Shown here piece by piece: positions 7,977 through 64,000 of a stretch of DNA of 64,000 bases (the stretch's first letter is position 1; every line of letters begins with the position of its first letter). The DNA lies in IMG/VR virus record IMGVR_UViG_3300032322_002561, positions 1-64,000 of that record. The stretch is one strand, 5' to 3'. The notes under the pieces were generated by a model that worked only from the letters and a program-made list of their open reading frames with translations, was not told the origin of the DNA and did no database searches. Position numbers and translations under genes: made by a program.

Positions 7977-8005
7977 AGTATACTAGTCTTCAGATATAAT
8001 CACAA
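7977..8005 (-). promoter_or_regulatory. Sigma70-like leaderless promoter for gp47 (TTGTGA-N17-TATACT-N6-ATG)
   Basis: Minus strand TTGTGA 8005-8000, TATACT 7982-7977, ATG at 7970; the -10 lies inside the 14-bp palindrome 7974-7987. Confidence 0.55.
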
Positions 8006-8891
8006 CCTCACTGGCAATCATGTTTGGATTTTTCTTGCCTGAGTTTTGACGTGTCCATGACGGATTGAGTCCGTTCATTTCTAAAATGTCATCGCGAATG
8101 TTTTGATTTTTCTTTTCCAGATTCAAGATCCTGGTAAAGCTGTTGGTAATGGCCGCGGTGTAGTAGGCAAAAGGATTTTGACTCTTGCTCTCATCAAACT
8201 GTAGACCAATCTGGCTGAGCTGTAGGAGTGCTTGTCCACGCATTTCCTCGTTGTAGGTATAGCCACGCCAGTTGCTACGTGTGGCATAGCGTTCACATAG
8301 TTTCATGAACATCATGGCCAGCTTGCGTGTCATTTGTCCGTGTTCGCGACAAAATTCTCCGTGCTCAAGATCGCCCCGCCAATGACTCTTGCCCACTAGA
8401 AATGGCTGTTTGTTTTCGTCTAGGCGATAGTGATAGAACGGGGGAAAGTTGAGTCGCACATGAGTGGGATCCAAGATTGGTTCATCCACAATGTCGTCTA
8501 GGCTTGCATCCATGGGATCATCGAGTTCAAGAATGTCTTCAATTTTCTTTTTCTTGGTCTGTGTCTTGGGCACTTTCTTGGGTGCCATGGGTATGTGTTC
8601 CCAGCAGGTTACTCGAAACACTAGATCAGTGTTGGGGATTTTTTTTGGGTCAATCACTGTGCCAGTTTCACGCTTGATGCGATCTGCGCGATTTCTACGT
8701 GCTTCGGCTATGGTTCTTTGATTGATCTTTTCCACTGTGGGCAGGATGATGTCATACTGATGATCAAGCACAGAGTCTCGATATGTGCAATATGTGTTTT
8801 TACTCAAGTGTATTTCTTTTAAAATATCTCGATTGTTGAGATAATTTACTTTGGGTGATGTTTTTGGAATCGCTACAGGTGGTGTTACCAT
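7983..8891 (-). CDS. gp55: Sigma factor for late transcription (T4 gp55 homologue) with a large internal insertion
   Basis: NYLNNRDILKEI N-terminus; WRGYTYNEEM...FDESKSQNPFAYYTAAITNSFTRILNLEKKNQNIRDDILE; adjacent to gp47; AGGAG SD. Confidence 0.88.
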   Translation of the reverse strand: MVTPPVAIPKTSPKVNYLNNRDILKEIHLSKNTYCTYRDSVLDHQYDIILPTVEKINQRTIAEARRNRADRIKRETGTVIDPKKIPNTDLVFRVTCWEHIPMAPKKVPKTQTKKKKIEDILELDDPMDASLDDIVDEPILDPTHVRLNFPPFYHYRLDENKQPFLVGKSHWRGDLEHGEFCREHGQMTRKLAMMFMKLCERYATRSNWRGYTYNEEMRGQALLQLSQIGLQFDESKSQNPFAYYTAAITNSFTRILNLEKKNQNIRDDILEMNGLNPSWTRQNSGKKNPNMIASEVVIISED

Positions 8892-8919: not shown

Positions 8920-8974
8920 GTAGCACAAAAACGACACTTGTCAACCGTTCTTAAACTACGTGGTTAAAAAAATG

Positions 8975-8982: not shown

Positions 8983-9000
8983 CACTACAAGGACCACGAC

Positions 9001-40987: not shown

Positions 40988-41325
40988 ATCTTGAAGAATT
41001 AGTAGATATTTTAACCAACACCCCAAAACCGCAACCGGTATTTTATCGTCTTTATCATGACGACCATGGCAATGCCTTGTTTTACAGTATGCAAGATGTG
41101 CCGGGCAAATATATTGAAATTGATCGCGATACCTATGCAAAAAACAGCATGCGGGTGAGAGTAGTCAATGGAGAATTACAAGAAGTGGCCTGGCGAACGG
41201 TCACTAAACTTGTGCCAAGCACTAGTGGTACCGCCTGTCACAAAACCAATGTGGCCGTGGTAGTTGATACAGATACCAACATAAAATGGAGTATGAAATG
41301 CACAGAGTTGATGTCGCAGACTTAG
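40984..41325 (+). CDS. Hypothetical protein
   Basis: Start reassigned to the ATGA overlap at 40984; FYRLYHDD.G..LFYSM. Confidence 0.6.
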   Translation: MNLEELVDILTNTPKPQPVFYRLYHDDHGNALFYSMQDVPGKYIEIDRDTYAKNSMRVRVVNGELQEVAWRTVTKLVPSTSGTACHKTNVAVVVDTDTNIKWSMKCTELMSQT

Positions 41326-42224: not shown

Positions 42225-42233
42225 AACAGTATC

Positions 42234-43178: not shown

Positions 43179-43179
43179 C

Positions 43180-51161: not shown

Positions 51162-52378
51162 ACTTGCCACACGATCAATTTTGTGTATTACCTTGGATCA
51201 GCTTAGAAGCCAGTCCCATTGGCACTGTGAGACCTTGTTGTTTAGCTGACGACGAAATTGTAGATGAACAAGGCGAAAAATTCAATTTGTCTTCAGCCAA
51301 CTTTGGAAGCATACAATCTAGTCGTCACATGACACAGCTCAGACAAGATTTCTTGTCGGGTAAAAAACCACAAACTTGTAGAAAGTGTTGGAACGAAGAA
51401 CGTGCTGGTCGTACCAGCAAACGCATGCACACTCTTGACAGACTCAAACATATTTTGCCCGATCAGGAGTGGACGCAGGATGCCAAACCCTTGATGTTCT
51501 TGGATCTCAAATTGGGCAATATCTGTAATTTGAAATGTAGAATTTGTGGCTCCTGGAGCTCCAGTCAATTTGCCACAGAAGAATTGGCTGACATGCCTTT
51601 GGAAACCGACAAAAAAACTACCTTTCCCTATCAAATGTTGCGTGCGGGATCATGGCCCAGAGACAACAAACAATTTTGGCAACAAATTGACCAGCACCTA
51701 CACGATATTAGGTACATTGAATTCACTGGTGGTGAACCATTCATGATTCAAGAACACTTTGACATGTTGCAAGGCATAGTAGATCGCGGCATTGCGCATC
51801 AAGTGGAAATACACTACAACACCAATGGCACTCAATGGCCCGAACAGGCCGAACAAATATGGCAACATTTTCGCACAGTGGAAATTGCATTCAGCATCGA
51901 TGACATTGGTGAAAGATTTGAATATCAACGTAGCAACGCTGTCTGGACTGAAGTATGTGCGAATCTTGAAAAATTCAACAAGTTAAAACAGCGACATTCA
52001 AATATTGTGCTACAAATTTGTACCACAGTGAATGTTTTCAACATACGGTATCTTGATCAAGTGGCTGCTTGGATTGACTCTCATAAAGAAAATTTTAACT
52101 TTGTGTACTGGAATATCATGCATGATGCCTGGTATTTCAGTATTTCTACCTTGCCAGACACAGTGAAAAAATCCTTGACAGAATACTTGACGTCTGTTGC
52201 GATACCAGAACAGTACAAATCAGAAATTCAAGGCATAATTGAATTTATGAATCGTGGTGCTTCCACAGATGGATTCATGTTAAAATTAAAAATAAAAGAT
52301 CTAGATCGCAAGCGCGGTCAAAATCTTGCTCTAGTAGAGCCAGAGTTTGCTCAATTGATTGACTATGCCGGCCCCTAA
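51158..52378 (+). CDS. Radical SAM protein with N-terminal twitch/SPASM-like domain (subtype B)
   Basis: CVLPW...PCC...CRKC; CNLKCRIC; TGGEP; YNTN. Confidence 0.9.
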   Translation: MNLPHDQFCVLPWISLEASPIGTVRPCCLADDEIVDEQGEKFNLSSANFGSIQSSRHMTQLRQDFLSGKKPQTCRKCWNEERAGRTSKRMHTLDRLKHILPDQEWTQDAKPLMFLDLKLGNICNLKCRICGSWSSSQFATEELADMPLETDKKTTFPYQMLRAGSWPRDNKQFWQQIDQHLHDIRYIEFTGGEPFMIQEHFDMLQGIVDRGIAHQVEIHYNTNGTQWPEQAEQIWQHFRTVEIAFSIDDIGERFEYQRSNAVWTEVCANLEKFNKLKQRHSNIVLQICTTVNVFNIRYLDQVAAWIDSHKENFNFVYWNIMHDAWYFSISTLPDTVKKSLTEYLTSVAIPEQYKSEIQGIIEFMNRGASTDGFMLKLKIKDLDRKRGQNLALVEPEFAQLIDYAGP

Positions 52379-53672
52379 GCAAAGACCTGAAACCCTGTGC
52401 ATGGCTCCGTGGACGCATACCTATCTTAGTCCACAGACCGAACGGCGCATGTGTTGTGCCAGCCGAGAACCTGCGCAAAACTTTGAGCAGTACATAGACA
52501 CGTCCTCAGGCACAGGCGAATATAGTCCCGTGGCTCTTGATGAACACTGGAATAGTGAACACATGAGAAGTGTGCGACTGCGTATGATGCGTGGGGAAAC
52601 CCTGCCCGAATGTGAAGTATGCAACAACAAGTTATTGAACACTGATGTATATCGAGACTATTTCAATAGACTGTTCGAGCACAAGTATGAGGAATGCATG
52701 CGTGCTACGGATCGCTATGGATTTACCAAGGTGCGCCCTGTGAGCTGGGATTATAGATTCAGTAACCTATGTAATTTTAAATGCAGAATGTGTGGAGACA
52801 TGTTGAGCTCTAGCTGGGAAACTGAACAGCGTCAACATGACATGATTGACTGGTCAGATAAAAAAAATACCTGGATGCGTCCTGAGGTTCGTGAACGTAT
52901 TTCACTCTATCAAGACACGCAAATTGAACATGAATTTGCACTGGCTGTGGAACAACATCGAGTAGAAGAAGTGTATTGGGTCGGTGGTGAGCCACTCATG
53001 TATGAACAGCACTGGCGTTATATGCGTCGTATCATCGAACTAGGCGATGGTCCTCGAGTGTATGCCAGATACAACACAAATCTCAGCAGGATAGACTACA
53101 AAGGAACAAATCTTTACACAGACATTTTGGCACACATACGTGATTGGCAGATATGTGCCAGTCTGGATGGGACTGGAGCCACCGGTGAATACATTAGAAC
53201 AGGCTTAAACTCTGAATCCTGGTTGGCAAATTTTGTGCAAGGTCGTCGGCTGGCCTCTCATCGCAGGCAAATGCGTATAGACTTTACTTTGACTTTGCCA
53301 GGACTTTTCCAAGTCGAGAACATAAACAGTCTTGCACAAAGTCTAGATGTAGATGTTCTAGCCAAGGTTGTTTTCAGTTTTACACCAGACATTATCATGA
53401 GTCCTTTGGCCTTGCCTAGACAGTTATTAGACGATACAGTAGACCGTTTGGCGGATCGTATACCAGCCGGTGCCTTGAAGGATGTGTTGTTACAGCTCAA
53501 ACAGCGACCTACATTTGCGGAACAATGGCCCACTGAGTGGCAGGCTGGACTTGCAAAAGGCAAGCGTCGTGTGTTAAAATTAGAACAAATACGTGGTGAT
53601 ACCTATACCATGGCAGATATACTCAGACCCAATCAGGAAATATATGACTGGTACCAAGCAATCGCTACTTGA
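52365..53672 (+). CDS. Radical SAM protein with N-terminal twitch/SPASM-like domain (subtype B)
   Basis: CMAPW...MCC...CEVC; CNFKCRMC; VGGEP; YNTN. Confidence 0.9.
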   Translation: MPAPKQRPETLCMAPWTHTYLSPQTERRMCCASREPAQNFEQYIDTSSGTGEYSPVALDEHWNSEHMRSVRLRMMRGETLPECEVCNNKLLNTDVYRDYFNRLFEHKYEECMRATDRYGFTKVRPVSWDYRFSNLCNFKCRMCGDMLSSSWETEQRQHDMIDWSDKKNTWMRPEVRERISLYQDTQIEHEFALAVEQHRVEEVYWVGGEPLMYEQHWRYMRRIIELGDGPRVYARYNTNLSRIDYKGTNLYTDILAHIRDWQICASLDGTGATGEYIRTGLNSESWLANFVQGRRLASHRRQMRIDFTLTLPGLFQVENINSLAQSLDVDVLAKVVFSFTPDIIMSPLALPRQLLDDTVDRLADRIPAGALKDVLLQLKQRPTFAEQWPTEWQAGLAKGKRRVLKLEQIRGDTYTMADILRPNQEIYDWYQAIAT

Positions 53673-54699
53673 TGTTGTAGAAATAGATCTAGGTACCGCA
53701 GAAGATCGTTTGCGTGTGTATGCCAACATCTATGACAACAGTCTCAGTCGCAAATGGCTAGCGGCCTTGAATGATTTGCTGATCAATCAATACCACCTGG
53801 AAAAGAACTACTGTTTTTTTGGATTTGCCGATGGTCCCAGGAACGGACCTTATCTGTTAGAACAAATCAATAACAGTATACAAGCTATTAACAAGTCCGG
53901 TATAGGCTATCACATTGACGATTATTTTGATATGGCCAACAGTGTGGATGAGTCAGACGATGTTGATCACAATCATTTCAATCAACTACACAGATACTTT
54001 GAAGACTTGCAAGGCGGCAGTGGCCACATCAGTGATTACTACTGGCAAGCTGACAACGCCACACGTTGGCATATTAGACAACTGAACTTGTTGTGCCATG
54101 AATTTGAAAGTTGGCAACTGAGCTGGCGGAAAAAACACACGGCACCGATGTGGCAACGACCCAGCCAACTCATGTGCTGGCTGAGTGCGCCACGTTTTGT
54201 TTTAGATGAAGCGGATTACGAACTGTTTGGCATAGAAACAATAAATCGTAGCCTGGGCGGAGTATATGTAGGCGTCAACAAAGCAGTTGGCAAACATCAC
54301 TGGGAAGTGTTTCAGGATGAAGGCCGCGACAGCAGGATAGGCGAGCTGACTACTACCAGCCTTAAAGCTCAAACTGAAGCCGCTGGAGACTTTGACATAG
54401 AGTGGGCCAACAATCCAGGCACATTTCCTTGGCAGATAAAACAACTAAAAGAGTTTCGCGAATGGCTAACGGTCAATGGCTTTGATCCCGAAGATCGTAG
54501 CTTGACCATTGGACATCCGCAGGTGGGACAAGTGGATTTAATCCGCAGTTTTGGCTCGGAAGATTATCAAGAGATTTGGGCGCAGTTAAATACTCATTTA
54601 AATGTGCATGCTATTCGCACCAGCACTGCACGTGCCACTTATGAATATTTGTGGTCTGACCCAGACTACATGCAACAACAACTGAGGAACATGAAATGA
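53644..54699 (+). CDS. Hypothetical protein (His/Glu-rich, LHRYFE and LCHEFE motifs)
   Basis: About 351-aa ORF coupled on both sides; start uncertain. Confidence 0.7.
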   Translation: MTGTKQSLLDVVEIDLGTAEDRLRVYANIYDNSLSRKWLAALNDLLINQYHLEKNYCFFGFADGPRNGPYLLEQINNSIQAINKSGIGYHIDDYFDMANSVDESDDVDHNHFNQLHRYFEDLQGGSGHISDYYWQADNATRWHIRQLNLLCHEFESWQLSWRKKHTAPMWQRPSQLMCWLSAPRFVLDEADYELFGIETINRSLGGVYVGVNKAVGKHHWEVFQDEGRDSRIGELTTTSLKAQTEAAGDFDIEWANNPGTFPWQIKQLKEFREWLTVNGFDPEDRSLTIGHPQVGQVDLIRSFGSEDYQEIWAQLNTHLNVHAIRTSTARATYEYLWSDPDYMQQQLRNMK

Positions 54700-54797: not shown

Positions 54798-54952
54798 TCA
54801 CTCCTTGTGTAAACATCTGTATCATGACCAATGGCGTGTGCGAAGGGTGTGGTCGCACCATTGATGAAATTGCAGAGTGGACCTTGTATACCGATCAAGA
54901 GCGGCTGACAATCATGCAAAGACTAGGACATGAGCAACATACTGGGAATTAG
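54794..54952 (+). CDS. DUF1289-like small Fe-S protein (not in ORF track)
   Basis: MITPCVNICIMTNGVCEGCGRTIDEIAEW...ER: the PC...C...C.GC.RT.DEI..W pattern. Confidence 0.85.
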   Translation: MITPCVNICIMTNGVCEGCGRTIDEIAEWTLYTDQERLTIMQRLGHEQHTGN

Positions 54953-56384
54953 TGCTGGATTTCATGATGCTGCTGTTACAGTAATTGATCGCCATGGCGA
55001 CATACTGTTTGCTGCACACAGTGAGCGTTTTAGCAAGAAAAAAAATGATGCCAATCTGCATCCTAATCTCATGATGGACGCTATGCATTACGGTGATATC
55101 AATCACATTGCGTACTATGAACGTCCCTGGCTAAAACAATTACGTAGACTACGAAGTGGCGAAGGCATACAGTGGGATCAACTCACTGTCAAACAAATAT
55201 TAACAAAACAACTGGGGTCAGCTGTGTGGCCTCAAATAAGCACTCACAATCATCACCTGTGCCATGCGGCTGCAGGTTTTCAAACCAGCCCATATGATCG
55301 TGCCACATGTGTGGTCATAGATGCCATTGGCGAATTTGACACAGTTTCAATCTGGGGAGCAGAATATGATAGTAAAAATCAAGCAAAGTATAAGAAACTT
55401 TGGAGCCAGAGTTACCCGAGGAGCATCGGGCTCTTTTATAGTGCAATTACTCAGCGAGTTGGCCTACACCCGCTAGATGAGGAATACATCACCATGGGCA
55501 TGTCCGCTTGGGGTCAGCCACGATATGTAGCGGAATGTCGCGCCCTGTTGGCGGATAACCTGCACATAGGCATAGACCCCAACTGGTTGCCTGACGCAGT
55601 CAATGAAGACATAGCTGCATCAGCACAGATTTTAACAGAAGAATTGATATATACGATTATACGTCGTGCTAAGGATTTTGATTGGAGCACCAATCTGGTG
55701 TACCAAGGCGGCGTGGCTTTGAACTGTCTTGCTAATAGAAAACTCGGTGAATATTTTGAAAACATTTGGATCATGCCTGCTCCTGGCGATAGTGGCAATA
55801 GTCTTGGCGCTGCCGCATTGGCCCACGGAAAACGTTTACGCTGGAGGCATGCGTTTCTTGGCCACGAAATCCCAGGAGAATATCCTGTTGGCGCCGTCGT
55901 TGATCATCTACTATCAAATCAGATCGCTGGAGTTGCTAGTGGACGAGCCGAGTTTGGACCTCGAGCCCTGGGAAACCGAAGCCTCCTCGCCGACCCCCGA
56001 GGAATACATATAAAGGATCAAGTCAATGCGATCAAACGCCGCCAAAAGTTTAGACCATTTGCGCCAGTTATCCTCTCAGAGCATGTGGATGAATTTTTTG
56101 ATATGCCCCGGGGTTGGAGTAGCAGTCCTTATATGCAGTCAATCGCAACTTGTCGCCGTCCTGACTTATTTCCTGCTATCTGTCATGTGGACAACACTAG
56201 CCGAGTACAGACTGTTGCGGCTGACGGCTCAGGCATTAGACGTCTCTTAGAGGCCTGGTATGCACGCACAGGCTGTCCCATGTTGCTGAACACCAGCTTG
56301 AACATACGCGGTGAACCCATGGTCAATGATCGTCGAGATGCAGATAGATTCGAACAACTATACGGTGTGAAAGTTTTTAGTTAA
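54930..56384 (+). CDS. O-carbamoyltransferase (NodU/CmcH/TobZ family)
   Basis: GFHDAA, ERFS, HHLCHAA, DAIGE, GGVALNC, EFGPRALGNRS, FRPFAP, RVQTV, LLNTSLN. Confidence 0.95.
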   Translation: MSNILGISAGFHDAAVTVIDRHGDILFAAHSERFSKKKNDANLHPNLMMDAMHYGDINHIAYYERPWLKQLRRLRSGEGIQWDQLTVKQILTKQLGSAVWPQISTHNHHLCHAAAGFQTSPYDRATCVVIDAIGEFDTVSIWGAEYDSKNQAKYKKLWSQSYPRSIGLFYSAITQRVGLHPLDEEYITMGMSAWGQPRYVAECRALLADNLHIGIDPNWLPDAVNEDIAASAQILTEELIYTIIRRAKDFDWSTNLVYQGGVALNCLANRKLGEYFENIWIMPAPGDSGNSLGAAALAHGKRLRWRHAFLGHEIPGEYPVGAVVDHLLSNQIAGVASGRAEFGPRALGNRSLLADPRGIHIKDQVNAIKRRQKFRPFAPVILSEHVDEFFDMPRGWSSSPYMQSIATCRRPDLFPAICHVDNTSRVQTVAADGSGIRRLLEAWYARTGCPMLLNTSLNIRGEPMVNDRRDADRFEQLYGVKVFS

Positions 56385-57406
56385 AGATAAGTTTCAAGAC
56401 CGCCACGTCTGCGTAAATCCTGAGTGCAACAACTTATGCCACCATCCCAAAAATAACTGTGACGCAGTTCTGAAATAATAGGGTTGATTCGGTGACGTTT
56501 GCAGTAATCAAATACTTCGCGATTGTAGGCACTGAATATCACATTTTCTTCATCTAGCACAAGACAGTTGACATCAAACACCGTTTCAGCCACAAAGCCA
56601 GTCCACTTGTTCAAATAGGTGTCTACAAATTGAGTGAACTCAGGTGTGGGAGTTTGTCCTTGCACATACCAGGCCCCAGGATTTGATTCGTATTTGAACT
56701 TGCCTACCTCCATGGCGGCCCAAATTGAACTATCCCAGATTTTACATATATCCCAGCCAGGAAAATCTCTGGCAAGATCAAGATTAACATCGTGCTTGCT
56801 GCTCAACAACACGCCTGGCTTGAGAATAGCAAACACGGCATCGCCGTGACCATCTGTGACAGCTTCGTGTATTCTATACTCTGGCCCCAGCACATTGTCC
56901 ACAATCCAGCGTGTTTGTTCTGGCTTCAAGAAATCACTGTTGTCAAAAAACACATCACGGCCCACACGCACAATACACGAAGCCGACGCACCATTCAAGA
57001 TACAATCTGGATCCCAAGCACTGCGATGTGGGTTAACCACCGATTCTGAAAACTTGGTGCAGACCTTGTCCAGTTCTGGCACTGCCAACACACGCAACAA
57101 ACGATCACCTAGAGTAATTTGCCAATCTCTGGGAGTCAAGGGCGGTAGTGGAGCTCCCCCGCCTTCGGTTTGAAACCACACAAATTCATCTTTGTTAGGC
57201 AGTTCAGGTCTGTGAACCAGGGCACCATACTGTTCAATTGTACGTTGCAGATTGTCAAGATCTTCCTGGGTTTCAGCCAGGATCTGTTGTAGTTGACAGC
57301 GTACCTGAGCATTGTCAATGAAATCAAAGTAATCGGGCGTGTAAGCACGACCCACAATGACTTCTTCAAGTGGTTGCCACGAGGTGTATGAATTAACTTT
57401 GGCCAT
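56381..57406 (-). CDS. Amidinotransferase-family (pentein) protein
   Basis: VNSYTSWQPLEEVIVGR, PRD, RVGRD, GHGDA, C-terminal GGISCCTQD. Confidence 0.85.
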   Translation of the reverse strand: MAKVNSYTSWQPLEEVIVGRAYTPDYFDFIDNAQVRCQLQQILAETQEDLDNLQRTIEQYGALVHRPELPNKDEFVWFQTEGGGAPLPPLTPRDWQITLGDRLLRVLAVPELDKVCTKFSESVVNPHRSAWDPDCILNGASASCIVRVGRDVFFDNSDFLKPEQTRWIVDNVLGPEYRIHEAVTDGHGDAVFAILKPGVLLSSKHDVNLDLARDFPGWDICKIWDSSIWAAMEVGKFKYESNPGAWYVQGQTPTPEFTQFVDTYLNKWTGFVAETVFDVNCLVLDEENVIFSAYNREVFDYCKRHRINPIISELRHSYFWDGGISCCTQDLRRRGGLETYL

Positions 57407-58589
57407 GGATTTTTTGATGCAAGTTATTTAAACGATCTAATTTTGATGTTGCAAATAGTCGTTGATTGTGATCAAGATCCGCCTGGCACTGTTTGTATAG
57501 ACTATCTAGACCCTGACTATGCGCCTGTTTGATAGCTTCGCACAATTTGATCCATCTATGAGTGTGATTGGGTTCTAGATCATATGTGTTATCTAACACA
57601 TCGTCAAACACTCGATATCCTAGATCACGCAATTGTTGTAGACTGCCAGCACCGCCAGCAACAAAAAACAACTGACCATGTTTGATGGGTTTAAATGTTT
57701 TTTCCGTGATAAAAGCACCGCCGCTTTGATCTACATCAAATTGACTTTCTAACACAATGTTGCAATAGCTGTCAACATGGTATTTGAATACGGTAATTCC
57801 ATGATCATTGCGTTGATCCTGCGTGAGATCGTCGCTGAAGTAGGGTGTTTGTGATACAAACTTCTCCAGTGACCAACGCAATTGTGAAATACTGTCAATC
57901 TCCAGCGGGTTGTCGCAGGTGCTGTCTTGATCAGTGGGTTTTTCGCAGTAACTCCAGTAACTGTTTTCCAACAAATTGTTTTTTTTCAAATCAGCCATGA
58001 TTGTGGCTCGCCACCATTTGTGCAGTCTAGACAGCACTGTGAAATCTTTCGAACGTGGTCGTGTGTGTATGGGCAAAGGTGCTTCACGGTTACGAGCATG
58101 ATACCAAAGTTCAAAATCTACAAAATACACAAAATTTTCTAGATTCTCGGCTGCGCTGTTGCTGCTCACAAACACATAACAATTTTTAGGTAGTGCATGT
58201 TGTTGCACCAAGCTGTCAAGTCTTGATTTTATGCGTTGCGGGTTGTCGCCCTCATGATACAAAAATAACACACGCAGTTGATGTTGTTTGAGTCGGTTGC
58301 GCACAGCAGACCCCATGAGTTCAAAATAGTCAATTTCAAAATCAAAAAATCCTATACCAATGGGATAAAAAGTATTTTCTGGCAGTGATGATTGCAGTTC
58401 ATGAATATTGATTTTGGCTCCATGTACTTGACAATATTCTTCCAGGCGCAAGGGAATGGTGTAGGGCCAGTGTTGTCCAAATTCTCTCCAGCTTTGAGTA
58501 TACGGCCGGCCCTGATGTCGAGCTAGAGCTGGATATATTTTGCCCTTGATGGTTCTGTCTGCTACAAAATTAAATTCTAAATTCATCAA
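57393..58589 (-). CDS. GT10-like glycosyltransferase-family protein
   Basis: CNIVLES...FITEKTFKPI...LFFV...LRDLGYRVF...DNTYD. Confidence 0.6.
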   Translation of the reverse strand: MMNLEFNFVADRTIKGKIYPALARHQGRPYTQSWREFGQHWPYTIPLRLEEYCQVHGAKINIHELQSSLPENTFYPIGIGFFDFEIDYFELMGSAVRNRLKQHQLRVLFLYHEGDNPQRIKSRLDSLVQQHALPKNCYVFVSSNSAAENLENFVYFVDFELWYHARNREAPLPIHTRPRSKDFTVLSRLHKWWRATIMADLKKNNLLENSYWSYCEKPTDQDSTCDNPLEIDSISQLRWSLEKFVSQTPYFSDDLTQDQRNDHGITVFKYHVDSYCNIVLESQFDVDQSGGAFITEKTFKPIKHGQLFFVAGGAGSLQQLRDLGYRVFDDVLDNTYDLEPNHTHRWIKLCEAIKQAHSQGLDSLYKQCQADLDHNQRLFATSKLDRLNNLHQKIHGQS

Positions 58590-59667
58590 ACATTCCTAAA
58601 AGTTCGGTCCAAAGCCGTTGACTAAATCCACCGTTGTAAAAATGATCAAAGTTATGCTCTACCACGGGCAAGCATCTGCGGTGTATTTCTTGACGCTCTT
58701 GCTGGCTCAAATTGTCAAGGTCTTTAAGTAATTTTACAATCTTTTCCATGCGCAGTCTATCATCGATTTCTTCATCATAGCTTTCATCAAATATGTCACC
58801 AAAGGTTTGGAATCCATATTCACGCATGTATGCCAAACTGCCTGCTGGTGCTACCAACACAAAAGGCATTTCTAGAGCAATGGCCTTGAAAGTTTTTTCT
58901 GTGATATGCAAACGGCGTCCAAAATATACAGTTTCTGTGGCCACGTATATCAAACTGTCAGCAGACTCTTCAAAATTGGTAAGCCAACAGCTGGCCATGT
59001 GTTGTGTGTCCTCGCCGCTGAACAATCTTGGCAATGTGGCTGCGGCAAACACTTGCTCAATGTCGGGATATATGTTATTATACTTAGAAGCAACTTGTGC
59101 TATATCAATGTTTTCGTACACACATGTTCTTGGAGCACTGATATGATTGTGCGCTAGATCATGTTTGAACACGTTATAAAGAAACAATACTCTATGATCA
59201 CGCTTGCCACCTACTATGCGATTGGGACTGATAAAAGTACGACTGGGTCGACGATTGCGAGCTCGAGCGATCAGAAAGGTTTTATCGTATCCACGGAACC
59301 AGTCCTGACTGGCCCAGCCGTGGAAAAAGTAGTAATGTGGAGTCCAGCCATACTGTTTGCACATAGCATCCACAAATTCTCCGCGTTCACTGACCACAAT
59401 GTGTCCAGGTGGTGTGTTTGGATATAAAATATCTCGATTACGTCTTTTTACATCTTGAAACAGGGGTTCGTGTAGATCCAGCCACACTGGTTCTTGATCA
59501 TGCATGTAAACATAGTCGGTTTCTATGATGTCATCCCTACCAAGATTAAATAAATGATCCTTGTCAGTGTGCCCAAACGGGTCACAAAAAAACAATCTTG
59601 TGCCTGGTCTGTGTTGTGCAAACCAAGGCCAAAATGTATGGTTGTAAATTTCATCAATTCTAATCAT
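58570..59667 (-). CDS. GT10-like glycosyltransferase-family protein
   Basis: KRDHR; IYVATET...HITEKTFKAI...MPFVLV...MREYGFQTF...DESYD. Confidence 0.6.
   Translation of the reverse strand: MIRIDEIYNHTFWPWFAQHRPGTRLFFCDPFGHTDKDHLFNLGRDDIIETDYVYMHDQEPVWLDLHEPLFQDVKRRNRDILYPNTPPGHIVVSERGEFVDAMCKQYGWTPHYYFFHGWASQDWFRGYDKTFLIARARNRRPSRTFISPNRIVGGKRDHRVLFLYNVFKHDLAHNHISAPRTCVYENIDIAQVASKYNNIYPDIEQVFAAATLPRLFSGEDTQHMASCWLTNFEESADSLIYVATETVYFGRRLHITEKTFKAIALEMPFVLVAPAGSLAYMREYGFQTFGDIFDESYDEEIDDRLRMEKIVKLLKDLDNLSQQERQEIHRRCLPVVEHNFDHFYNGGFSQRLWTELLGMFDEFRI
59546..59552 (+). promoter_or_regulatory. Possible internal late promoter TTAAATA for the 998-aa gene
   Basis: 113 nt upstream of ATG 59666, inside the antisense gene. 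Confidence 0.3.
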
Positions 59668-62662
59668 GTTTGACGTATTTTATATTGGGACTAAACCAAA
59701 TTTGTTTGCGCATGAGAAACCGTGTCGTGATATCACGCATGCACAGGAATTAAGTGGCACACGTTTTTGTTGGGTAGTGGATTATTTAACCGACTACACA
59801 GGCTTTGATTTTTTATGGGAACCCCCGCCCTGGCAGGCAGATTTTACACATGTTTGGCCCAGTCAGTGGGATCAGTACCATGCGGCATATTTGATTCCAA
59901 AACATGCCACAAGTCTTGATTATCACGCACACACCCAAACTCTTTGGCCCAAAAAGTTTCTAGACAATTATCAAACATTGGTGCCTTGTCAGTTTGATTA
60001 TTCATGGGTGCCACACCCGTGGGAACCACCATACATTTATGTGTTTGGTAATCAACACTATGCCAGCACCATCATGCCCACGGTGGAATATTATACACCA
60101 GGTGCCACAGAACGAAAGTTTGTTGATGACATAGCGGCTAGACTGTTGCCCTGTCGTGATAATTGGGAAATTCTTGAACCCATAGACCAAGAATCCTGGG
60201 ACTGGTCTTGGAGACCCGATCCAGGAGAACCTGCCTATATCTATGTGTTTGGCAATCAATGGAATCCGCCTGAATTCAAAGCCAGCGTGCGTTATGTTGT
60301 GCCCGGTGCCACACAAGTCAAATACATGGATCAGCGTACACGTCGACTACCACAGCCCGAACTGTTCCGTCACAATTTGCCTGTAGCAAAATTTGACTAC
60401 TCATGGGAACCCAATCCGTTTGATCCGCCCATGACCTATGTGTTTGGAAATCAATGGAATCCAGCAGTGCTAGAGCCCACGATAGTTTACAGCACTGGCG
60501 GCACAGAAATCAAGTATGTGGATGACATTGTGGCCACGATAGCCCAGGAAATGACATCATGGACTCTGTTAGACGATATAGAAACATTTGATTACAGTTG
60601 GAGACCCAATCCCACAGATCCGCCTTATATCTATGTGTTTGGAAATCAGTGGCTGACTCCTGAGCAACGTCCGGCTTTGCGTTATGCTGTGCCTGGAGCC
60701 ACTGAAATCAAATACATGCACGAACCTCGTGCTAGACGTGTAGGCAATCCTGAACTGTTTGTGCAATTGTATCCTTGTAACTTTGACTGGTCATGGGAAC
60801 CTGACCCTGGAAGCCCGCCTTATATCTACGTGTTCGGCAATCAATACTACCCCGCTGAAGTCATGCCCACAGTAGAATATCATGCGCCAGGTGCCACCGA
60901 GCGGAAATACATGGACGTGCCCGCACAGCTATTGCCGGATGACACATCGGCCTGGAAACTGTTGCATACCTGTGAATGGGACAAAACCTGGCGTCCAGAA
61001 CCAGGAAGTCCGGCCTACATTTATGTGTTTGGTAATCAGTGGTGGCCAGCAGAAAAAATGCCCACAGTAGAATATCACATGCAGGGTGCCACGGAACGCA
61101 AGTACATGACAGCGCCTGTGGCTCAACTACCTGTAGACATGACACAGTGGCATGTGCCCGAGGGCGTAGACGTGCGTGACATGGATTTTTCTTGGGTGCC
61201 CGATCCTGGTGAACCGCCTTACATATATCAGTTCGCTACACAACATCAAAAAACTGGTGGACCACAATACCGTGTGCCAGGCGCTGTTGAAGTCAAATAC
61301 TTGGATATGATGCGTGCCACAGTCACTAAAGAAGCTGTGCCCATATTTGAAATTGATCACTTGGATGGCAATGCCGGGCAGATTCCCAATACGGTGCGCC
61401 GCGTGCGTTACTTTGACAACTATCGAGACACCTTGATTCGCTTGGCTAAAAACCTCAAAGGCGAATACGAACATATATGGGTGTGCAGTAGCGTTTGTGA
61501 TTACACAGACTTTGACTTTAGTTGGCATCCAGAAATCTGGCAAAGCACCATGTTACATGTGTTTGCGTCAGACGGGGAAAAGTTTGGTGACACATTTTAC
61601 ATGCATGTGCCTACCTTTGCTGAACGTGCTGAGAAAAAAGAGTTGTTAGAATGGTACAGTGTAAACTATGTGTCACGTCGGAACGTGCCACGCAGGCCCT
61701 TGCCGATGATACAACACAATCATGACACACATGTCGAAGCAGTCAAAACCATGACATGGTCTGGGCCTTTGGCAGTGTTTGCCACAGAACCTGTAGAGCG
61801 AATTCCTCCTGTGCCACTATGGCGAGAAAAGACTAAAACGGTTGTGCCACTGAGTAAGGGTGCTAGTCAAGTCATAGTGCCCAAGGTGGCAGTGCCCTAT
61901 ATCAAAACTCAGTTGTATGATTATCCCTACATAGACAAGACACAACGACATCTTTGCAAAGAACAACCCTTGGACATAGTCTTCATTGACAACGGCGAAC
62001 CCAATGCTGAATCTAATTATCAGCACCTGGTGGAAGTGGCCAGCCTGACTTGGCGCAATCGTATACACCGCAGTACAGGAGTCACAGGCCGTGTGGCCGC
62101 ATATCATGCCGCAGCTGAACTAAGTAGCACACCTTGGTTTTTTGCTGTGTTTGCCAAGTTGCGTGTTGATAAAGATTTTGATTGGTTATGGCAACCAGAC
62201 CGTATGCAGGAACCCAAGCACTATATCTTCCATGCGTTTAATCCTGTGAATGGCTTGGAGTATGGGCACCAGGCCATGATTGCCTACAACAAACGATTGG
62301 TCCTGGCCAACCCAGGCACAGGACTTGACTTTACCTTGGATTCAGCACACGAAGTAGTGCCTATACTATCAGGTACGGCCCACTATACAGATTCGGCTTG
62401 GATGGCCTGGCGCACTGCGTTCCGCGAAGTAATCAAACTGCGTCACAGTTTGCCCAATGTAGAAAACGAATACAGATTAAACAAGTGGCTACAAGAAAAC
62501 AACGACAATGATCGTGCGATGTACAGTCATTTGGGTGCGCAGGATGCTGTGGAGTATTACGAATCTGTTAAAGGGGATGAAACAGAACTACGCAAGAGCT
62601 ATGACTGGGCCTGGTTGGCCAGTTATGCTTTGATCAAACGCAATCTAACAGCGAGTCAATAA
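59666..62662 (+). CDS. 998-aa protein: tandem about 65-aa W/Y/P-rich repeats plus a C-terminal GT-A-like domain lacking DxD
   Basis: Seven FDxSWxPxPxxPxYIYVFGNQ repeats; C-terminus aligns by eye to the 41298 GT (IVFIDNGEPNAE..., NPVNGLEYGH..., AWRTAFREVIKL). Confidence 0.85.
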   Translation: MFDVFYIGTKPNLFAHEKPCRDITHAQELSGTRFCWVVDYLTDYTGFDFLWEPPPWQADFTHVWPSQWDQYHAAYLIPKHATSLDYHAHTQTLWPKKFLDNYQTLVPCQFDYSWVPHPWEPPYIYVFGNQHYASTIMPTVEYYTPGATERKFVDDIAARLLPCRDNWEILEPIDQESWDWSWRPDPGEPAYIYVFGNQWNPPEFKASVRYVVPGATQVKYMDQRTRRLPQPELFRHNLPVAKFDYSWEPNPFDPPMTYVFGNQWNPAVLEPTIVYSTGGTEIKYVDDIVATIAQEMTSWTLLDDIETFDYSWRPNPTDPPYIYVFGNQWLTPEQRPALRYAVPGATEIKYMHEPRARRVGNPELFVQLYPCNFDWSWEPDPGSPPYIYVFGNQYYPAEVMPTVEYHAPGATERKYMDVPAQLLPDDTSAWKLLHTCEWDKTWRPEPGSPAYIYVFGNQWWPAEKMPTVEYHMQGATERKYMTAPVAQLPVDMTQWHVPEGVDVRDMDFSWVPDPGEPPYIYQFATQHQKTGGPQYRVPGAVEVKYLDMMRATVTKEAVPIFEIDHLDGNAGQIPNTVRRVRYFDNYRDTLIRLAKNLKGEYEHIWVCSSVCDYTDFDFSWHPEIWQSTMLHVFASDGEKFGDTFYMHVPTFAERAEKKELLEWYSVNYVSRRNVPRRPLPMIQHNHDTHVEAVKTMTWSGPLAVFATEPVERIPPVPLWREKTKTVVPLSKGASQVIVPKVAVPYIKTQLYDYPYIDKTQRHLCKEQPLDIVFIDNGEPNAESNYQHLVEVASLTWRNRIHRSTGVTGRVAAYHAAAELSSTPWFFAVFAKLRVDKDFDWLWQPDRMQEPKHYIFHAFNPVNGLEYGHQAMIAYNKRLVLANPGTGLDFTLDSAHEVVPILSGTAHYTDSAWMAWRTAFREVIKLRHSLPNVENEYRLNKWLQENNDNDRAMYSHLGAQDAVEYYESVKGDETELRKSYDWAWLASYALIKRNLTASQ
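59783..59789 (-). promoter_or_regulatory. Possible internal late promoter (G)TTAAATA for the minus-strand cassette
   Basis: 115 nt upstream of ATG 59667; same octamer as at 8975. Confidence 0.3.
59993..61320 (+). repeat. Seven tandem about 195-nt coding repeats
   Basis: Recurrent TATGTGTTTGG(T/C/A)AATCA; GCCCACAGTAGAATATCA occurs in two units. Confidence 0.9.
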
Positions 62663-63710
62663 CATACTCAACTTCTAGATCTGTCAGTTCAGGATAGATA
62701 GGCAAACACAGGGTTCTGCGACTCAAGGCCGACGCAACACTGAGTACATCGGGTCCTGGAAATTCATCGTAAGCTGGTAGCTCATGCAAGGGTTCCCAAG
62801 ACAAAATCTTGGTTTCAATTCTGCGTATTTCAAGATTGCGTTGTAGGATATCACGCTTGTCTACATCAATCACAAACTTGTTGACAGCATGAGTTCTATG
62901 ATTGGTCTCGTCTATGAGACTGCGTGCTCGAGTACCACGCAAGCGTTCCAGCCAATACCCTGCAATTTTACTACGTCTGCGTTGCCAGTCATCTAAGTAC
63001 CGGGTTTTGACCATGAGTTGGGCACAGTCAACTTCACTCATTCTTGAATTGGTGCCAATCATTTGATGATTTGGTTTACCATTGTTGCGCCAACTTCGTG
63101 CAAAATCCAACATATTAATATCATCAGTAACTATGGCACCACCGTTGCCGTAACTGTTGAAATTTTTCATAGGGTCAAAACTTATGGCTGTTACATTGCC
63201 CACACGTCTACATGCATCACTGAGCCAGTGCTGAGCACCATCTTCAATTATGATAGCATTGTTGTTCAAGTATTCGTGTTTGTTGATGCTTTGCCCATAC
63301 AAGCCCACGGCCACTGTGGCCTGTACACTTTGTTCACGATCAATTTTCTTATGATCCATTTGACCGTAGGCATCGGTATCTACTATGGTCACAGTCCAGC
63401 CAGCACGTTGAAAGGCATTTATAGTGGCCACATAAGTCATGGCCGGTATCAACACACGCGGTGGCCTAGGCATGTAACCTTGAGTGGCATAATATTCGGC
63501 AATGATTTCCAAGGCTTGTGTGCCCGAATGACAGGTTACAGCATATTTGGTACCGTTCTTTTTGGCTAGCCAATTTTCTAATTCGGCTGTGTAGTTGCCG
63601 TCCATGAGTCGACCACTGCGTAAAACTTCATCAGTGGCATCTAGTATTTCTGTTCTGAGATTGTTATACTGTTTTTTGATTCCAGTAAACGGAATTTGCA
63701 AGCCATTCAT
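62634..63710 (-). CDS. DegT/DnrJ/EryC1/StrS-family PLP-dependent sugar aminotransferase
   Basis: SGTQAL, PAMTYVAT, IEDGAQ, SFDPMKNFNSYGNGG (catalytic Lys), GTNSRMSE, LCLPIYP; start reassigned to ATG 63710. Confidence 0.93.
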   Translation of the reverse strand: MNGLQIPFTGIKKQYNNLRTEILDATDEVLRSGRLMDGNYTAELENWLAKKNGTKYAVTCHSGTQALEIIAEYYATQGYMPRPPRVLIPAMTYVATINAFQRAGWTVTIVDTDAYGQMDHKKIDREQSVQATVAVGLYGQSINKHEYLNNNAIIIEDGAQHWLSDACRRVGNVTAISFDPMKNFNSYGNGGAIVTDDINMLDFARSWRNNGKPNHQMIGTNSRMSEVDCAQLMVKTRYLDDWQRRRSKIAGYWLERLRGTRARSLIDETNHRTHAVNKFVIDVDKRDILQRNLEIRRIETKILSWEPLHELPAYDEFPGPDVLSVASALSRRTLCLPIYPELTDLEVEYVIDSLLDCV

Positions 63711-64000
63711 GATATATTTGAAATCCTTGTTCGACATCTACCTGTGGATCATATCCAAAATCTCGCTGTGCTGCTTCTATATTTAACGCACCGCGGCTGG
63801 GGAAATCCGCATCTTTGTCGTGAATTTCAATGCGCCCGCGACCTATCAACTCAACTATTTTTTGTGCGGCTTGTAAAAGTGTAACACTGTGACTCTTGGT
63901 GATGTTGTATGTTTTGTTTACTGCGTTTAAACTCAGTGCGGCACCCATTATGCCACGAGCGGCATCATCTACATAGGTAAAGTCCAAGGTTTCAGAAGCA
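63664..64000 (-). CDS. NAD-dependent NDP-sugar epimerase/dehydratase, C-terminal part (5' end outside window)
   Basis: ETLDFTYVDDAARG...YNI...RGALNI..A...FGY.P.V.VEQG. Confidence 0.85.
   Translation of the reverse strand, partial: ASETLDFTYVDDAARGIMGAALSLNAVNKTYNITKSHSVTLLQAAQKIVELIGRGRIEIHDKDADFPSRGALNIEAAQRDFGYDPQVDVEQGFQIYHEWLANSVYWNQKTV

What the first reader, a model, noticed from the sequence alone, without database searches (positions are those of the whole stretch)
56381..59668. Opposite-strand three-gene cassette bounded by a shared double stop (TTAA) and a shared double start (CATG)
At 56381-56384 one TTAA supplies the stop of the + carbamoyltransferase (56382-84) and of the - amidinotransferase (56383-81). 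At 59665-59668 one CATG supplies the ATG of the + 998-aa gene (59666) and of the - GT gene (59667). There is zero intergenic DNA at either junction, so the promoters and ribosome-binding sites of the divergent pair must lie inside each other's coding sequence. This suggests a near-precise inversion or captured cassette, or a deliberate antisense switch. Flipping the block would make 39143-62662 one co-directional operon, although a simple inversion does not exactly restore TAATG-type junctions.
Basis: partly seen in the sequence, partly recalled or inferred. Interest (0 to 1): 0.7.

Follow-up and report, generated by a model that had tools for sequence, protein, structure and literature searches.

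The report
Conserved head-to-head phage gene junction
Two sugar-transferase genes of an uncultivated jumbo phage (about 340 kb by estimate) start back to back on one shared CATG; related phages keep this junction, so it is an old, fully compacted layout, not a flipped cassette or a DNA switch.

Summary
The geometry is real. TTAA (56381-84) holds both stops. CATG (59665-68) holds both ATGs.

The window is the first 64 kb of a 236-kb IMG/VR phage record with a T4-like late sigma factor. The block encodes two GT-B glycosyltransferase paralogues and an amidinotransferase. It lies inside a sugar-modification cluster.

All 55 related loci keep the same gene order and orientation. CATG is kept in 41 of 45 distinct junctions; the other four have 1-3 nt spacers. 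It is also kept in relatives whose GT is only 41% and 32% identical. The 17-nt core occurs in at least 119 viral contigs. No flanking inverted repeats and no strand-switch joints were found. Inversion, capture and a DNA switch are therefore not supported.

The TTAA stop overlap is ordinary: at least 7 of 38 convergent junctions here have it, and the site varies among relatives.

TAAATA is the phage's late-promoter core by footprinting. It lies 113 nt upstream of the 998-aa gene and 115 nt upstream of the GT, each time inside the partner gene, and unusual codon choices preserve it. Both starts lack a Shine-Dalgarno motif and sit in an AT-rich, unstructured core under synonymous constraint.

Transcription was not observed. 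Antisense cross-talk remains speculative.

The parts
54930..56384 (+). NodU/CmcH-type carbamoyltransferase (484 aa). It is the last gene of the plus-strand sugar-modification operon.
   Evidence: Pfam Carbam_trans_C 1.6e-47 and Carbam_trans_N 3.4e-36. PHROG 1601 1.3e-91.
56381..56384 (.). TTAA shared by two convergent stop codons.
   Evidence: The same TTAA is in 6 of 42 distinct relatives. Thirty-four relatives have 0.5-4.6 kb of other genes inserted here, and one has a 26-nt spacer containing a hairpin.
56381..57406 (-). Amidinotransferase-family protein (341 aa).
   Evidence: phmmer against PDB: AGAT 2jdx 8.8e-14, StrB1 1.7e-10, SxtG, HsvA. Catalytic Cys, His and Asp are aligned.
57425..57431 (-). 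TTAAATA late-promoter-like motif 18 nt upstream of the amidinotransferase ATG, inside the 3' end of the 398-aa gene.
   Evidence: It is kept 15-21 nt upstream in most of 41 distinct relatives, including L005, which lacks the 398-aa gene.
57393..58586 (-). Paralogue of the GT (397 aa from ATG 58586; the longest ORF starts at TTG 58589). It overlaps the GT stop region by 17 nt.
   Evidence: BLASTP against GT365 gives 9e-12 over the ITEKTFK...YD.E region. The gene is absent from about 10 relatives.
58570..59667 (-). GT-B fold glycosyltransferase (365 aa). It is the first gene of the minus-strand unit.
   Evidence: AF2 pLDDT 93.7. VIA Z 11.5 to T4 beta-glucosyltransferase, 10.7 to H. pylori alpha-1,3-fucosyltransferase and 10.4 to T4 alpha-glucosyltransferase. 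More than 3000 homologues, with start and length conserved.
59546..59552 (+). TTAAATA late-promoter-like motif 113 nt upstream of the R998 ATG, inside GT365 codons 39-41.
   Evidence: It is present at the same position in 34 of 45 relatives, against 31% expected from codon usage.
59647..59686 (.). AT-rich core around the shared starts (codons 2-7 of both genes) under synonymous constraint. It has no Shine-Dalgarno motif on either strand.
   Evidence: Synonymous diversity is 0.24 here against 0.50 elsewhere (Mann-Whitney p = 9e-5). The 50-nt windows centred on the starts have 26% GC and an MFE of about -3 kcal/mol, against means of -8.2 and -8.6. Metagenome contigs of relatives pile up on 59623-59688.
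59665..59668 (.). CATG shared by two divergent start codons.
59666..62662 (+). 998-aa multidomain protein. It has an N-terminal Rossmann-like start, about six beta-rich 'W.PDP..PPYIYVFGNQ' modules and a C-terminal GT-A-like domain.
   Evidence: AF2 pLDDT 77.8 with strand E3-6. Foldseek: Mimivirus R699 4.6e-4, PBCV-1 A64R probability 1.0, LH3, RmlT, GtrB. Homologues range from 534 to 2047 aa according to module number.
59783..59789 (-). TTAAATA late-promoter-like motif 115 nt upstream of the GT365 ATG, inside R998 codons 40-42.
   Evidence: TAARTA is present in 41 of 41 relatives and TAAATA in about 20 of 45. The R998 Leu41 codon is TTA in 43 of 43 relatives. It is the only one of 39 conserved Leu columns with no synonymous variation.
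62634..62662 (.). 29-nt convergent overlap between the 3' ends of R998 and the DegT aminotransferase gene.
   Evidence: Similar overlaps occur in many relatives.
62634..63737 (-). DegT/DnrJ/EryC1-type sugar aminotransferase.
   Evidence: Pfam 6.1e-55. A TAAATA lies 42 nt upstream at 63780-63785 and is kept in 16 of 41 relatives.
7983..8891 (-). Context: phage late sigma factor (T4 gp55-like). It is the presumed reader of the TAAATA promoters.
   Evidence: phrog_12791 9.6e-75 and phrog_234 7.9e-24.

Best explanation
This is an old, stable, maximally compacted gene layout in the glycan-modification module of a T4-like jumbo phage. It is not a rearrangement.

Layout. The minus-strand unit (GT-B glycosyltransferase, its paralogue, amidinotransferase) and the single plus-strand gene (a 998-aa GT-A-like multidomain protein) abut as closely as two conserved N-termini allow. 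The two ATGs interlock as CATG. At the other end, the two stops interlock as TTAA whenever no accessory gene lies between them.

Why zero intergenic DNA is tolerable (inferred). This phage's late promoters are very short. They consist of a TAAATA core of the T4 TATAAATA type, read with a gp55-like sigma, and need no -35 box. Such a promoter can be written inside a Leu-Asn or Tyr-Leu codon pair of the neighbouring gene.

Predicted transcription (inferred). One such motif lies 113 nt upstream of the 998-aa gene, inside the GT. One lies 115 nt upstream of the GT, inside the 998-aa gene. A third lies 18 nt upstream of the amidinotransferase. With T4 spacing, transcription would begin near 59558 (+) and 59777 (-). 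That would give leaders of about 108-110 nt.

Predicted translation (inferred). Translation would start without a Shine-Dalgarno motif in a shared, AT-rich, weakly structured core of about 40 nt. The first six codons of each gene double as the other gene's pre-start region.

Shown: the geometry, the true starts and stops, the deep conservation, the motif footprint, the codon-level constraint, and the folds of the proteins.

Inferred: that the motifs fire, where transcripts begin, and how ribosomes are recruited.
For: - Geometry and true ends.
- Conservation of order, orientation and CATG: 41 of 45 distinct junctions; GT 41% identical; GT 32% identical; at least 119 contigs.
- Not a switch: no inverted repeats at the block ends, no strand-change joints, no compositional anomaly.
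- TAAATA as the late-promoter core. A late sigma gene is present. TAAATA-containing 7-mers lead the list of those enriched upstream of genes. Thirty-eight of its 98 occurrences lie within 60 nt upstream of a gene in sense orientation, against 8 of 98 in antisense. The genome holds 98 copies against 204 expected from composition. It is kept 17-25 nt upstream of a virion-protein gene in almost all of the roughly 40 distinct relatives with a usable upstream region, down to 43% identity, while the flanks diverge.
- Embedded motifs at the focal genes: positions 113, 115, 18 and 42 nt upstream. Retention is 34 of 45 and about 20 of 45, against 31% and 16% expected. TAARTA is present in 41 of 41. Leu41 is TTA in 43 of 43, unique among 39 conserved Leu columns. 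The amidinotransferase motif is kept in most of 41 relatives and also in a relative without the upstream gene.
- Start region: no Shine-Dalgarno motif, halved synonymous diversity in codons 2-7 only, low GC and low predicted structure.
- Stop/stop 4-nt overlaps are a known modal class, and divergent overlaps are known to be rare (PMC2174442).
Against: - No RNA data exist for this phage. The RNA runs held only relatives, as contigs without direction. No transcription start has been seen.
- About 10 of 41 relatives have no TAAATA within 260 nt on either side of the junction yet keep CATG. These motifs therefore cannot be the only route to expression.
- At the GT-side site more than half of the relatives read TAAGTA. 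That variant is only modestly enriched upstream of genes (8 of 37 in sense, 2 of 37 in antisense).
- The motifs fall on conserved Leu-Asn and Tyr-Leu residues, so part of their persistence is protein-level.
- Leaders of about 110 nt are longer than the usual 0-45 nt seen after TAAATA in this genome.
- No homologue of the T4 co-activator clamp gp45 was found in the incomplete record; gp33 was not searched for.
- Reduced synonymous variation next to start codons is common in any gene.
- The related sequences are not independent, so the counts overstate the number of events.
Confidence: 0.6

Rival explanations
1. Regulatory reading. The layout is as above, but the face-to-face embedded promoters are used for control. 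RNA polymerases from the two promoters converge over about 220 bp (59558-59777). The two mRNAs carry perfectly complementary 5' ends that cover both start codons. Transcriptional interference or RNA duplex formation would then set the ratio of the GT-A-like protein to the GT-B unit.
For: Both motifs point toward each other at nearly equal distances of 113 and 115 nt. All relatives with TAAATA on the GT side also have it on the R998 side. Zero to 3 nt spacing is kept down to 32% GT identity, which suggests that insertions are not tolerated. PMC2174442 mentions reciprocal antisense regulation as a possibility for complementary-strand overlaps.
Against: No RNA evidence exists. About a quarter of the relatives lack both motifs but keep the junction. 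Deletion bias plus two conserved N-termini explains the tight spacing without any regulation. Any overlap of divergent units gives complementary RNAs as a by-product.
Confidence: 0.15
2. Read-through only. Neither gene has a promoter of its own. The GT unit is reached by minus-strand transcripts that begin upstream of DegT and run antisense through R998. R998 is reached by plus-strand transcripts of the long upstream operon that run antisense through the three-gene block. The internal TAAATA sites are by-products of conserved residues.
For: No convincing terminators lie between the units, and none of the strong sigma-70 consensus promoters lies upstream of either focal start. A TAAATA lies 42 nt upstream of DegT. 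Some relatives lack the internal motifs.
Against: Leu41 is TTA in 43 of 43 relatives, and motif retention is two to three times the codon-usage expectation. The amidinotransferase-proximal TTAAATA is conserved even without the upstream gene, so internal promoters are used in this block. One relative has a hairpin between the convergent genes, so read-through is at least sometimes stopped. Three kb of convergent antisense transcription would be costly.
Confidence: 0.15
3. Recent inversion, captured cassette or invertible DNA switch.
For: The three genes are antiparallel to the long plus-strand operon on their left. Flipping them would give one direction from 39143 to 62662.
Against: All 55 related loci, and a relative at 41% GT identity, have the same orientation. 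The junction sequence itself is conserved. No inverted repeats flank the block. None of the neighbours scanned against Pfam matched a recombinase family. The contigs show no strand-change joints. Composition shows no anomaly.
Confidence: 0.02
4. Artefact. The overlaps come from choosing the longest ORFs or from mis-assembly, and the true starts lie downstream, as in the database call at TTG 59702.
For: The database's own gene call for R998 is 986 aa. Logan unitigs break at the CATG.
Against: Codons 1-12 evolve as coding sequence, and the TTG is not conserved. The structure model begins with a strand at residues 3-6. The same junction occurs in two independent assemblies and in at least 119 other contigs. 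The unitig break coincides with the ultra-conserved core shared by co-occurring relatives, seen as depth spikes.
Confidence: 0.02

Closest known systems
Short gene overlaps in compact prokaryotic and phage genomes (4-nt stop/stop and start/stop overlaps; rare divergent overlaps), as analysed in PMC2174442 and PMC2716372
   Same: TTAA is the classic 4-nt overlap of termination codons on complementary strands. Such overlaps recur in this genome, in at least 7 of 38 convergent junctions. CATG is the head-to-head counterpart for two ATGs.
   Different: Divergent overlaps are strikingly under-represented in general, and many are mis-annotations. Here both starts are supported by conservation from residue 1. 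The 2-nt start/start overlap is kept in a family seen in at least 119 viral contigs, down to 32% identity of one partner.
T4 late promoters (TATAAATA at -10, no -35 element, read by gp55 with gp33 and the gp45 clamp; from my own knowledge of T4 biology)
   Same: A gp55-like late sigma gene is present. A TAAATA core matching the last six bases of the T4 motif is enriched and footprinted upstream of genes, including a virion-protein gene. Such a short element can sit inside coding sequence.
   Different: The conserved core is 6-7 nt (often GTTAAATA), not TATAAATA, which is not enriched here (7 copies). No gp45 homologue was found in the incomplete record; gp33 was not searched for. No transcription start was mapped. 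The leaders predicted at the focal genes, about 110 nt, are long.
Face-to-face promoters with complementary 5' RNA ends (IS10 RNA-IN/RNA-OUT; coliphage 186 pR/pL; from my own knowledge)
   Same: The two predicted promoters point at each other. The predicted transcripts are complementary over both translation starts.
   Different: Here both RNAs would be mRNAs for large enzymes. The overlap would be about 220 nt. Nothing has been shown at the RNA level. This is a resemblance in layout only.
Site-specific invertible segments (Hin/Gin/Cin G segments, fimS)
   Same: A block of genes lies in the opposite orientation to its neighbours, with sharp boundaries.
   Different: There are no inverted repeats, no recombinase, no orientation heterogeneity and no alternative orientation among relatives.
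Virus-encoded glycan machineries (chlorovirus PBCV-1 A64R, Mimivirus R699 and sugar-nucleotide enzymes; T4 DNA glucosyltransferases)
   Same: The cluster combines an NDP-sugar 4,6-dehydratase, a DegT aminotransferase, a carbamoyltransferase, an amidinotransferase, five or six radical SAM enzymes, and GT-A-like and GT-B proteins. Structural matches include A64R, R699 and T4 BGT/AGT.
   Different: The acceptor (virion protein, DNA or host surface) is unknown. The matches are at fold level only (identity 6-14%). The repeat-module architecture of the 998-aa protein has no solved counterpart.

Membership tests
4-nt stop/stop convergent overlap | Both stop codons are the true ends of real genes. | tested here: met
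   Homologues align to residue 484 of the carbamoyltransferase and residue 341 of the amidinotransferase.
4-nt stop/stop convergent overlap | Four shared bases hold two complementary-strand stops, and the pattern recurs in the genome. | tested here: met
   TTAA at 56381-84. At least 7 of 38 convergent junctions show a -4 overlap.
Divergent start/start overlap | Both start codons are the true N-termini. | tested here: met
   Residue-1 conservation and third-position variation in codons 2-13 of both genes. Homologue coverage is 100%. The model has a strand at residues 3-6. No proteomic proof is available.
Invertible DNA switch | Inverted repeats at both boundaries of the segment. | tested here: not met
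   None of the 25 longest of 39 inverted-repeat pairs in 55800-60300 has its two arms at the two boundaries, 56381 and 59668.
Invertible DNA switch | Both orientations exist in a population or among close relatives. | tested here: not met
   All 55 loci have one orientation. The source-sample contigs show no strand-change joints. Only contigs could be laid, not raw reads, so rare variants could be missed.
Invertible DNA switch | A recombinase or invertase gene nearby. | tested here: not met
   Pfam scans of the long ORFs (100 aa or more) between 36 and 64 kb gave no recombinase family.
T4-type late promoter | The phage encodes a gp55-like late sigma factor. | tested here: met
   Window 7983-8891: phrog_12791 9.6e-75 and phrog_234 7.9e-24. 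No Pfam match was found.
T4-type late promoter | A short AT-rich -10-type motif is conserved upstream of late (structural) genes, without a -35 box. | tested here: met
   TAAATA is enriched in sense orientation (38 of 98 against 8 of 98). It is footprinted upstream of the virion-protein gene across almost all of the roughly 40 distinct relatives with a usable upstream region.
T4-type late promoter | The motif is present upstream of the focal genes. | tested here: inconclusive
   It is present at 113, 115 and 18 nt upstream, with codon-level constraint. It is absent on both sides of the junction in about 10 of 41 relatives.
T4-type late promoter | Transcripts start about 6 nt downstream of the motif. 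| not testable with these tools
   No RNA run holds this phage, and only contigs of relatives could be laid.
T4-type late promoter | The co-activator clamp gp45 is encoded. | tested here: inconclusive
   PF09116 and PF02916 were not found. The record is only 68% complete, and the control search for one family found nothing anywhere.
Amidinotransferase (AGAT/StrB1/SxtG/HsvA) | Sequence similarity over the fold, with the catalytic Cys, His and Asp. | tested here: met
   2jdx 8.8e-14. Aligned segments are GRDVF/GRDIF, H.DA/HIDA and S-C-C-T/H-C-W-T. Pfam itself gave no hit.
GT-B glycosyltransferase | Two-Rossmann-domain fold. | tested here: met
   Model pLDDT 93.7. Z is 11.5 to T4 BGT, 10.7 to GT10 FucT and 10.4 to T4 AGT, over residues 1-365.
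GT-B glycosyltransferase | Donor and acceptor specificity. | not tested
   No Pfam family matched any of the 38 family members scanned.
Antisense pair of the IS10 RNA-IN/RNA-OUT type | Two convergent promoters shown to give complementary 5' RNAs that affect each other. | not testable with these tools
   Only the motif layout is available.

The most novel reading that the evidence does not exclude
The interlocked CATG and the two promoter-like motifs embedded face to face form a built-in reciprocal antisense and transcriptional-interference device. It would fix the stoichiometry or timing of a giant GT-A-like enzyme relative to the GT-B/amidinotransferase unit during late infection. It would be conserved across a large clade of uncultivated freshwater jumbo phages.
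Probability: 0.15. Interest if true: 0.6.

Novelty: new member of a known kind. Interest (0 to 1): 0.33.

Why it matters
- Evolution of layout. The case shows how far a phage genome can be compacted. Two conserved N-termini interlock on one palindromic tetranucleotide, and the layout stays that way over deep divergence. This appears possible because the promoters are short enough to be written into codons.
- Annotation. Automatic gene callers systematically move the start of the 998-aa gene to an internal TTG or truncate the gene. They therefore hide the overlap, create false 'intergenic' gaps and remove the first beta-strand of the protein.
- Phage transcription. The TAAATA footprint gives a testable late-promoter definition for an abundant, uncultivated phage clade. 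It includes a class of genes that look leaderless.
- Limits. The function of the glycan cluster is open: the acceptor could be a virion protein, DNA or the host surface. The junction itself does not indicate a new kind of mobile or switchable element.

Tried and rejected
- RNA evidence. Two run searches found no RNA run holding this phage. Laying four RNA-labelled runs at 80% likeness gave only short pieces of relatives. These concentrated on the conserved core and carried no 5'-end information.
- DNA orientation check. Only Logan contigs were available. The TTAA is bridged exactly. The CATG is reached from both sides by unitigs that end 10 nt past it. No inverted joints were seen.
- Reference phages. 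The INPHARED collection gave no DNA or protein match.
- Pfam. It gave nothing for the GT, its paralogue, the amidinotransferase or R998.
- Sigma-70 promoter scan of 54.5-64 kb. It found 15 sites against 18 expected, none close to the junction. The genome's strong TTGACC-17-TATAAT promoters lie almost all on the minus strand of 65-236 kb.
- Exact T4 motif TATAAATA. There are only 7 copies, so it is not enriched. ATAAAATA next to the GT start is not enriched either.
- Leaderless expression of the two focal genes. I considered and rejected this. The class seen elsewhere is TAAATA-N4-6-ATG. The GT has AAAATA-N8-ATG, and R998 has no match.
- Other searches with no result: the gp45 clamp, Rfam and Tandem Repeats Finder on R998.

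Full report
**Observation**

The window reads TTAA at 56381-56384 and CATG at 59665-59668. The ORF table places four codons on these tetranucleotides:
- the stop of the + ORF 54930..56384;
- the stop of the - ORF 56381..57406;
- the ATG of the - ORF 58570..59667;
- the ATG of the + ORF 59666..62662.

The window is the first 64 kb of a 236,309-base IMG/VR virus record that CheckV rates 68% complete. Relatives reach 320-350 kb. This is an uncultivated jumbo phage.

**Are the ends and starts real?**

- The 365-aa protein has more than 3000 homologues. Most are 361-372 aa and cover residues 1-365.
- Homologues of the carbamoyltransferase and the 341-aa protein align to their last residues.
- The database's own call for the 998-aa gene is 986 aa, starting at TTG 59702, which avoids the overlap. 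That call is wrong:
  - In 43 distinct relatives the protein begins MFD[VI]FY.G.KPN.
  - Codons 2-13 vary mainly at third positions. Mean entropy by position is 0.47/0.38/1.04 for R998 and 0.13/0.04/0.70 for the GT.
  - The TTG is present in only 25 of 43 relatives.
  - The AF2 model puts the first beta-strand at residues 3-6.
- Similar mis-calls (an internal TTG start, or a truncated gene) occur in distant relatives.

**What the genes are**

- 54930..56384 is a NodU/CmcH-type carbamoyltransferase.
- 56381..57406 belongs to the amidinotransferase family. AGAT scores 8.8e-14, and StrB1, SxtG and HsvA also match. The catalytic Cys, His and Asp are aligned.
- 58570..59667 folds with pLDDT 93.7 as a GT-B glycosyltransferase. 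Z is 11.5 to T4 beta-glucosyltransferase, 10.7 to a GT10 fucosyltransferase and 10.4 to T4 alpha-glucosyltransferase.
- 57393..58586 is its paralogue (9e-12).
- The 998-aa protein has a short Rossmann-like N-terminus, about six beta-rich modules and a C-terminal alpha/beta region. It gives weak but coherent GT-A matches: Mimivirus R699, PBCV-1 A64R, LH3, RmlT and GtrB.
- Around them lie an NDP-sugar 4,6-dehydratase, five or six radical SAM enzymes and a DegT aminotransferase.
- Upstream lie virion and baseplate genes and a gp55-like late sigma factor.

The block is part of a sugar-modification module next to structural genes.

**Inversion, cassette or switch?**

I fetched 55 related loci with GT identity of 57-100%.
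- All have the same order and orientation: DegT, R998, GT365, G398, AT341, CT.
- So do relatives at 41% GT identity.
- Among 45 distinct junction sequences, 41 read CATG. Four have CAT-A-ATG, CAT-AA-ATG or CAT-TAA-ATG.
- CATG is also shared where the GT is only 41% and 32% identical.
- No inverted repeats sit at the block ends.
- No recombinase is nearby.
- Composition shows no shift.
- The source-sample contigs show no strand-change joints.

The block is not a lone anomaly either. DegT is also on the minus strand and overlaps the R998 3' end by 29 nt. R998 is therefore a single plus-strand gene wedged between minus-strand units. A recent inversion, a captured cassette and an invertible switch are not supported.

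**The convergent end is ordinary and variable**

At least 7 of 38 convergent junctions in this genome share 4 nt between stops. This is the known modal overlap class (PMC2174442). Among 42 distinct relatives:
- six have the same TTAA;
- two have short spacers, one with a clear hairpin;
- 34 carry 0.5-4.6 kb of other genes between the amidinotransferase and the carbamoyltransferase.

**How can a divergent pair work with no spacer?**

Real divergent pairs elsewhere in the genome have 75-230 nt spacers. Those spacers hold sigma-70 consensus promoters (TTGACC-17-TATAAT) and AAGGAG ribosome-binding sites. Such promoters lie almost all on the minus strand of 65-236 kb. None lies upstream of either start at the junction.

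A second signal emerged. TAAATA-containing 7-mers lead the list of those enriched upstream of genes. Of the 98 TAAATA copies, 38 lie within 60 nt upstream of a start in sense orientation, against 8 in antisense. The genome holds half the number expected from composition. In the non-coding region upstream of the virion-protein gene at 9001, TAAATA is kept 17-25 nt before the ATG. This holds in almost all of the roughly 40 distinct relatives with a usable upstream region, down to 43% identity, while the flanks diverge. With the gp55-like sigma, this identifies TAAATA as the late-promoter core. It matches the last six bases of T4's TATAAATA (the T4 motif is from my own knowledge).

In the focal block such motifs lie in four places:
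- 113 nt upstream of the R998 ATG (59547-52, +, inside GT codons 39-41);
- 115 nt upstream of the GT ATG (59788-83, -, inside R998 codons 40-41);
- 18 nt upstream of the amidinotransferase ATG (57430-25, -);
- 42 nt upstream of DegT.

Codon choices preserve them.
- The R998-side motif is kept in 34 of 45 relatives, against 31% expected.
- The GT-side site reads TAARTA in 41 of 41 relatives.
- R998 Leu41 is TTA in 43 of 43. It is the only one of 39 conserved Leu columns with no synonymous variation.
- The amidinotransferase motif is kept in most of 41 relatives, including one that lacks the upstream gene.

**The start region**

- Neither gene has a Shine-Dalgarno motif.
- Synonymous diversity in codons 2-7 of both genes is 0.24, against 0.50 elsewhere (p = 9e-5). 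It returns to normal by codons 8-20.
- The 50-nt windows centred on the starts have 26% GC and an MFE of about -3 kcal/mol, against means of -8.2 and -8.6.
- Contigs of many relatives pile up on 59623-59688 in every metagenome laid.

Each gene's first six codons thus double as the other's pre-start region.

**Best explanation (confidence 0.6)**

This is an ancestral, maximally compacted junction. Deletion pressure has removed all spacer until the two conserved N-termini interlock. This is tolerable because late promoters are short enough to be encoded within the partner gene, and because initiation uses an open AT-rich site. With T4 spacing, transcripts would begin near 59558 (+) and 59777 (-).

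Weaknesses:
- No transcript was observed.
- About 10 of 41 relatives lack TAAATA on both sides of the junction.
- TAAGTA is only modestly enriched upstream of genes.
- Leaders of about 110 nt are long for this genome.
- No gp45 homologue was found in the incomplete record; gp33 was not searched for.
- The related sequences are not independent.

**Rivals**

- The two promoters face each other, and the predicted RNAs are complementary over about 220 nt, including both starts. Reciprocal interference is possible but untested (0.15).
- Pure read-through from distant promoters is also possible (0.15).
- Inversion or a switch (0.02) and artefact (0.02) are very unlikely.

**Verdict**

The TTAA is ordinary. 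The conserved CATG start-sharing is a tidy, deep example of a rare but known overlap class. Its practical consequences are for gene calling and for defining late promoters in this clade.

Noticed in passing
G000:C1 79675(-), 105344(-), 141879(-), 143810(-), 152464(-), 158464(-), 178973(-), 180184(-), 207127(-), 214951(-), 226327(-), 228096(-), 124281(+), 221569(+); in the window 16173(+): A class of genes has TAAATA followed by 4-6 nt and then the ATG of a long ORF. This holds for 19 of 98 TAAATA copies, against 2-12% for composition-matched hexamers. With T4 spacing the A of the ATG would be the transcription start, so these late mRNAs may be leaderless.
   Followed up: partly
window 8892-9000 and loci L060-L138: A divergent spacer carries two promoter types. 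A sigma-70-type TTGACA-16-TACAAT serves the late-sigma gene on the minus strand. A TAAATA plus an AGGA ribosome site serves the virion-protein gene on the plus strand. Both are footprinted across distant relatives.
   Followed up: yes
window 59666-59702; L058 3790-4273; L139 386-424: Automatic gene calls place the start of the R998 family at an internal TTG (codon 13) or truncate the gene. This hides the CATG overlap and leaves false intergenic gaps of up to 481 nt.
   Followed up: yes
window 59950-61300 (R998 residues about 100-540): Homologues range from 534 to 2047 aa according to the number of about 65-aa 'W.PDP..PPYIYVFGNQ' beta-rich modules. There is no DNA-level tandem repeat. Metagenome contigs show skips such as 60054 to 60863 and 60262 to 60853, which may be module-number variants or relatives.
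   Followed up: partly
window 20304-35501: A single 5065-aa ORF lies on the plus strand among virion and baseplate genes. I did not examine it.
   Followed up: no
G000:C1 65000-236309: About 40 near-consensus sigma-70 promoters (TTGACC-17-TATAAT, often TGn-extended) are followed by AAGGAG and an ATG. Nearly all are on the minus strand. The 9-64 kb structural and glycan module lacks such promoter-plus-AAGGAG units.
   Followed up: partly
window 56381; loci L004-L057: The amidinotransferase/carbamoyltransferase junction is an insertion hot spot. Thirty-four of 42 relatives carry 0.5-4.6 kb of extra genes there. L004 has a 26-nt spacer with a GC-rich hairpin flanked by A and T runs, which looks like a two-way terminator.
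   Followed up: partly
window 39445-54699 and 372-1472: The density of radical SAM and SPASM enzymes is unusual, with at least six (44172, 45963, 49902, 51158, 52359 and 372-1472). They lie beside a sugar dehydratase and several ORFs with no family match.
   Followed up: no
window 59665 (metagenome runs X4, X5): Contigs of relatives in two RNA-labelled libraries carry ATTA inserted after 59665, which gives CAT-TA-ATG. This is a 2-nt spacer whose sequence (TA) differs from the AA seen among the fetched loci.
   Followed up: no
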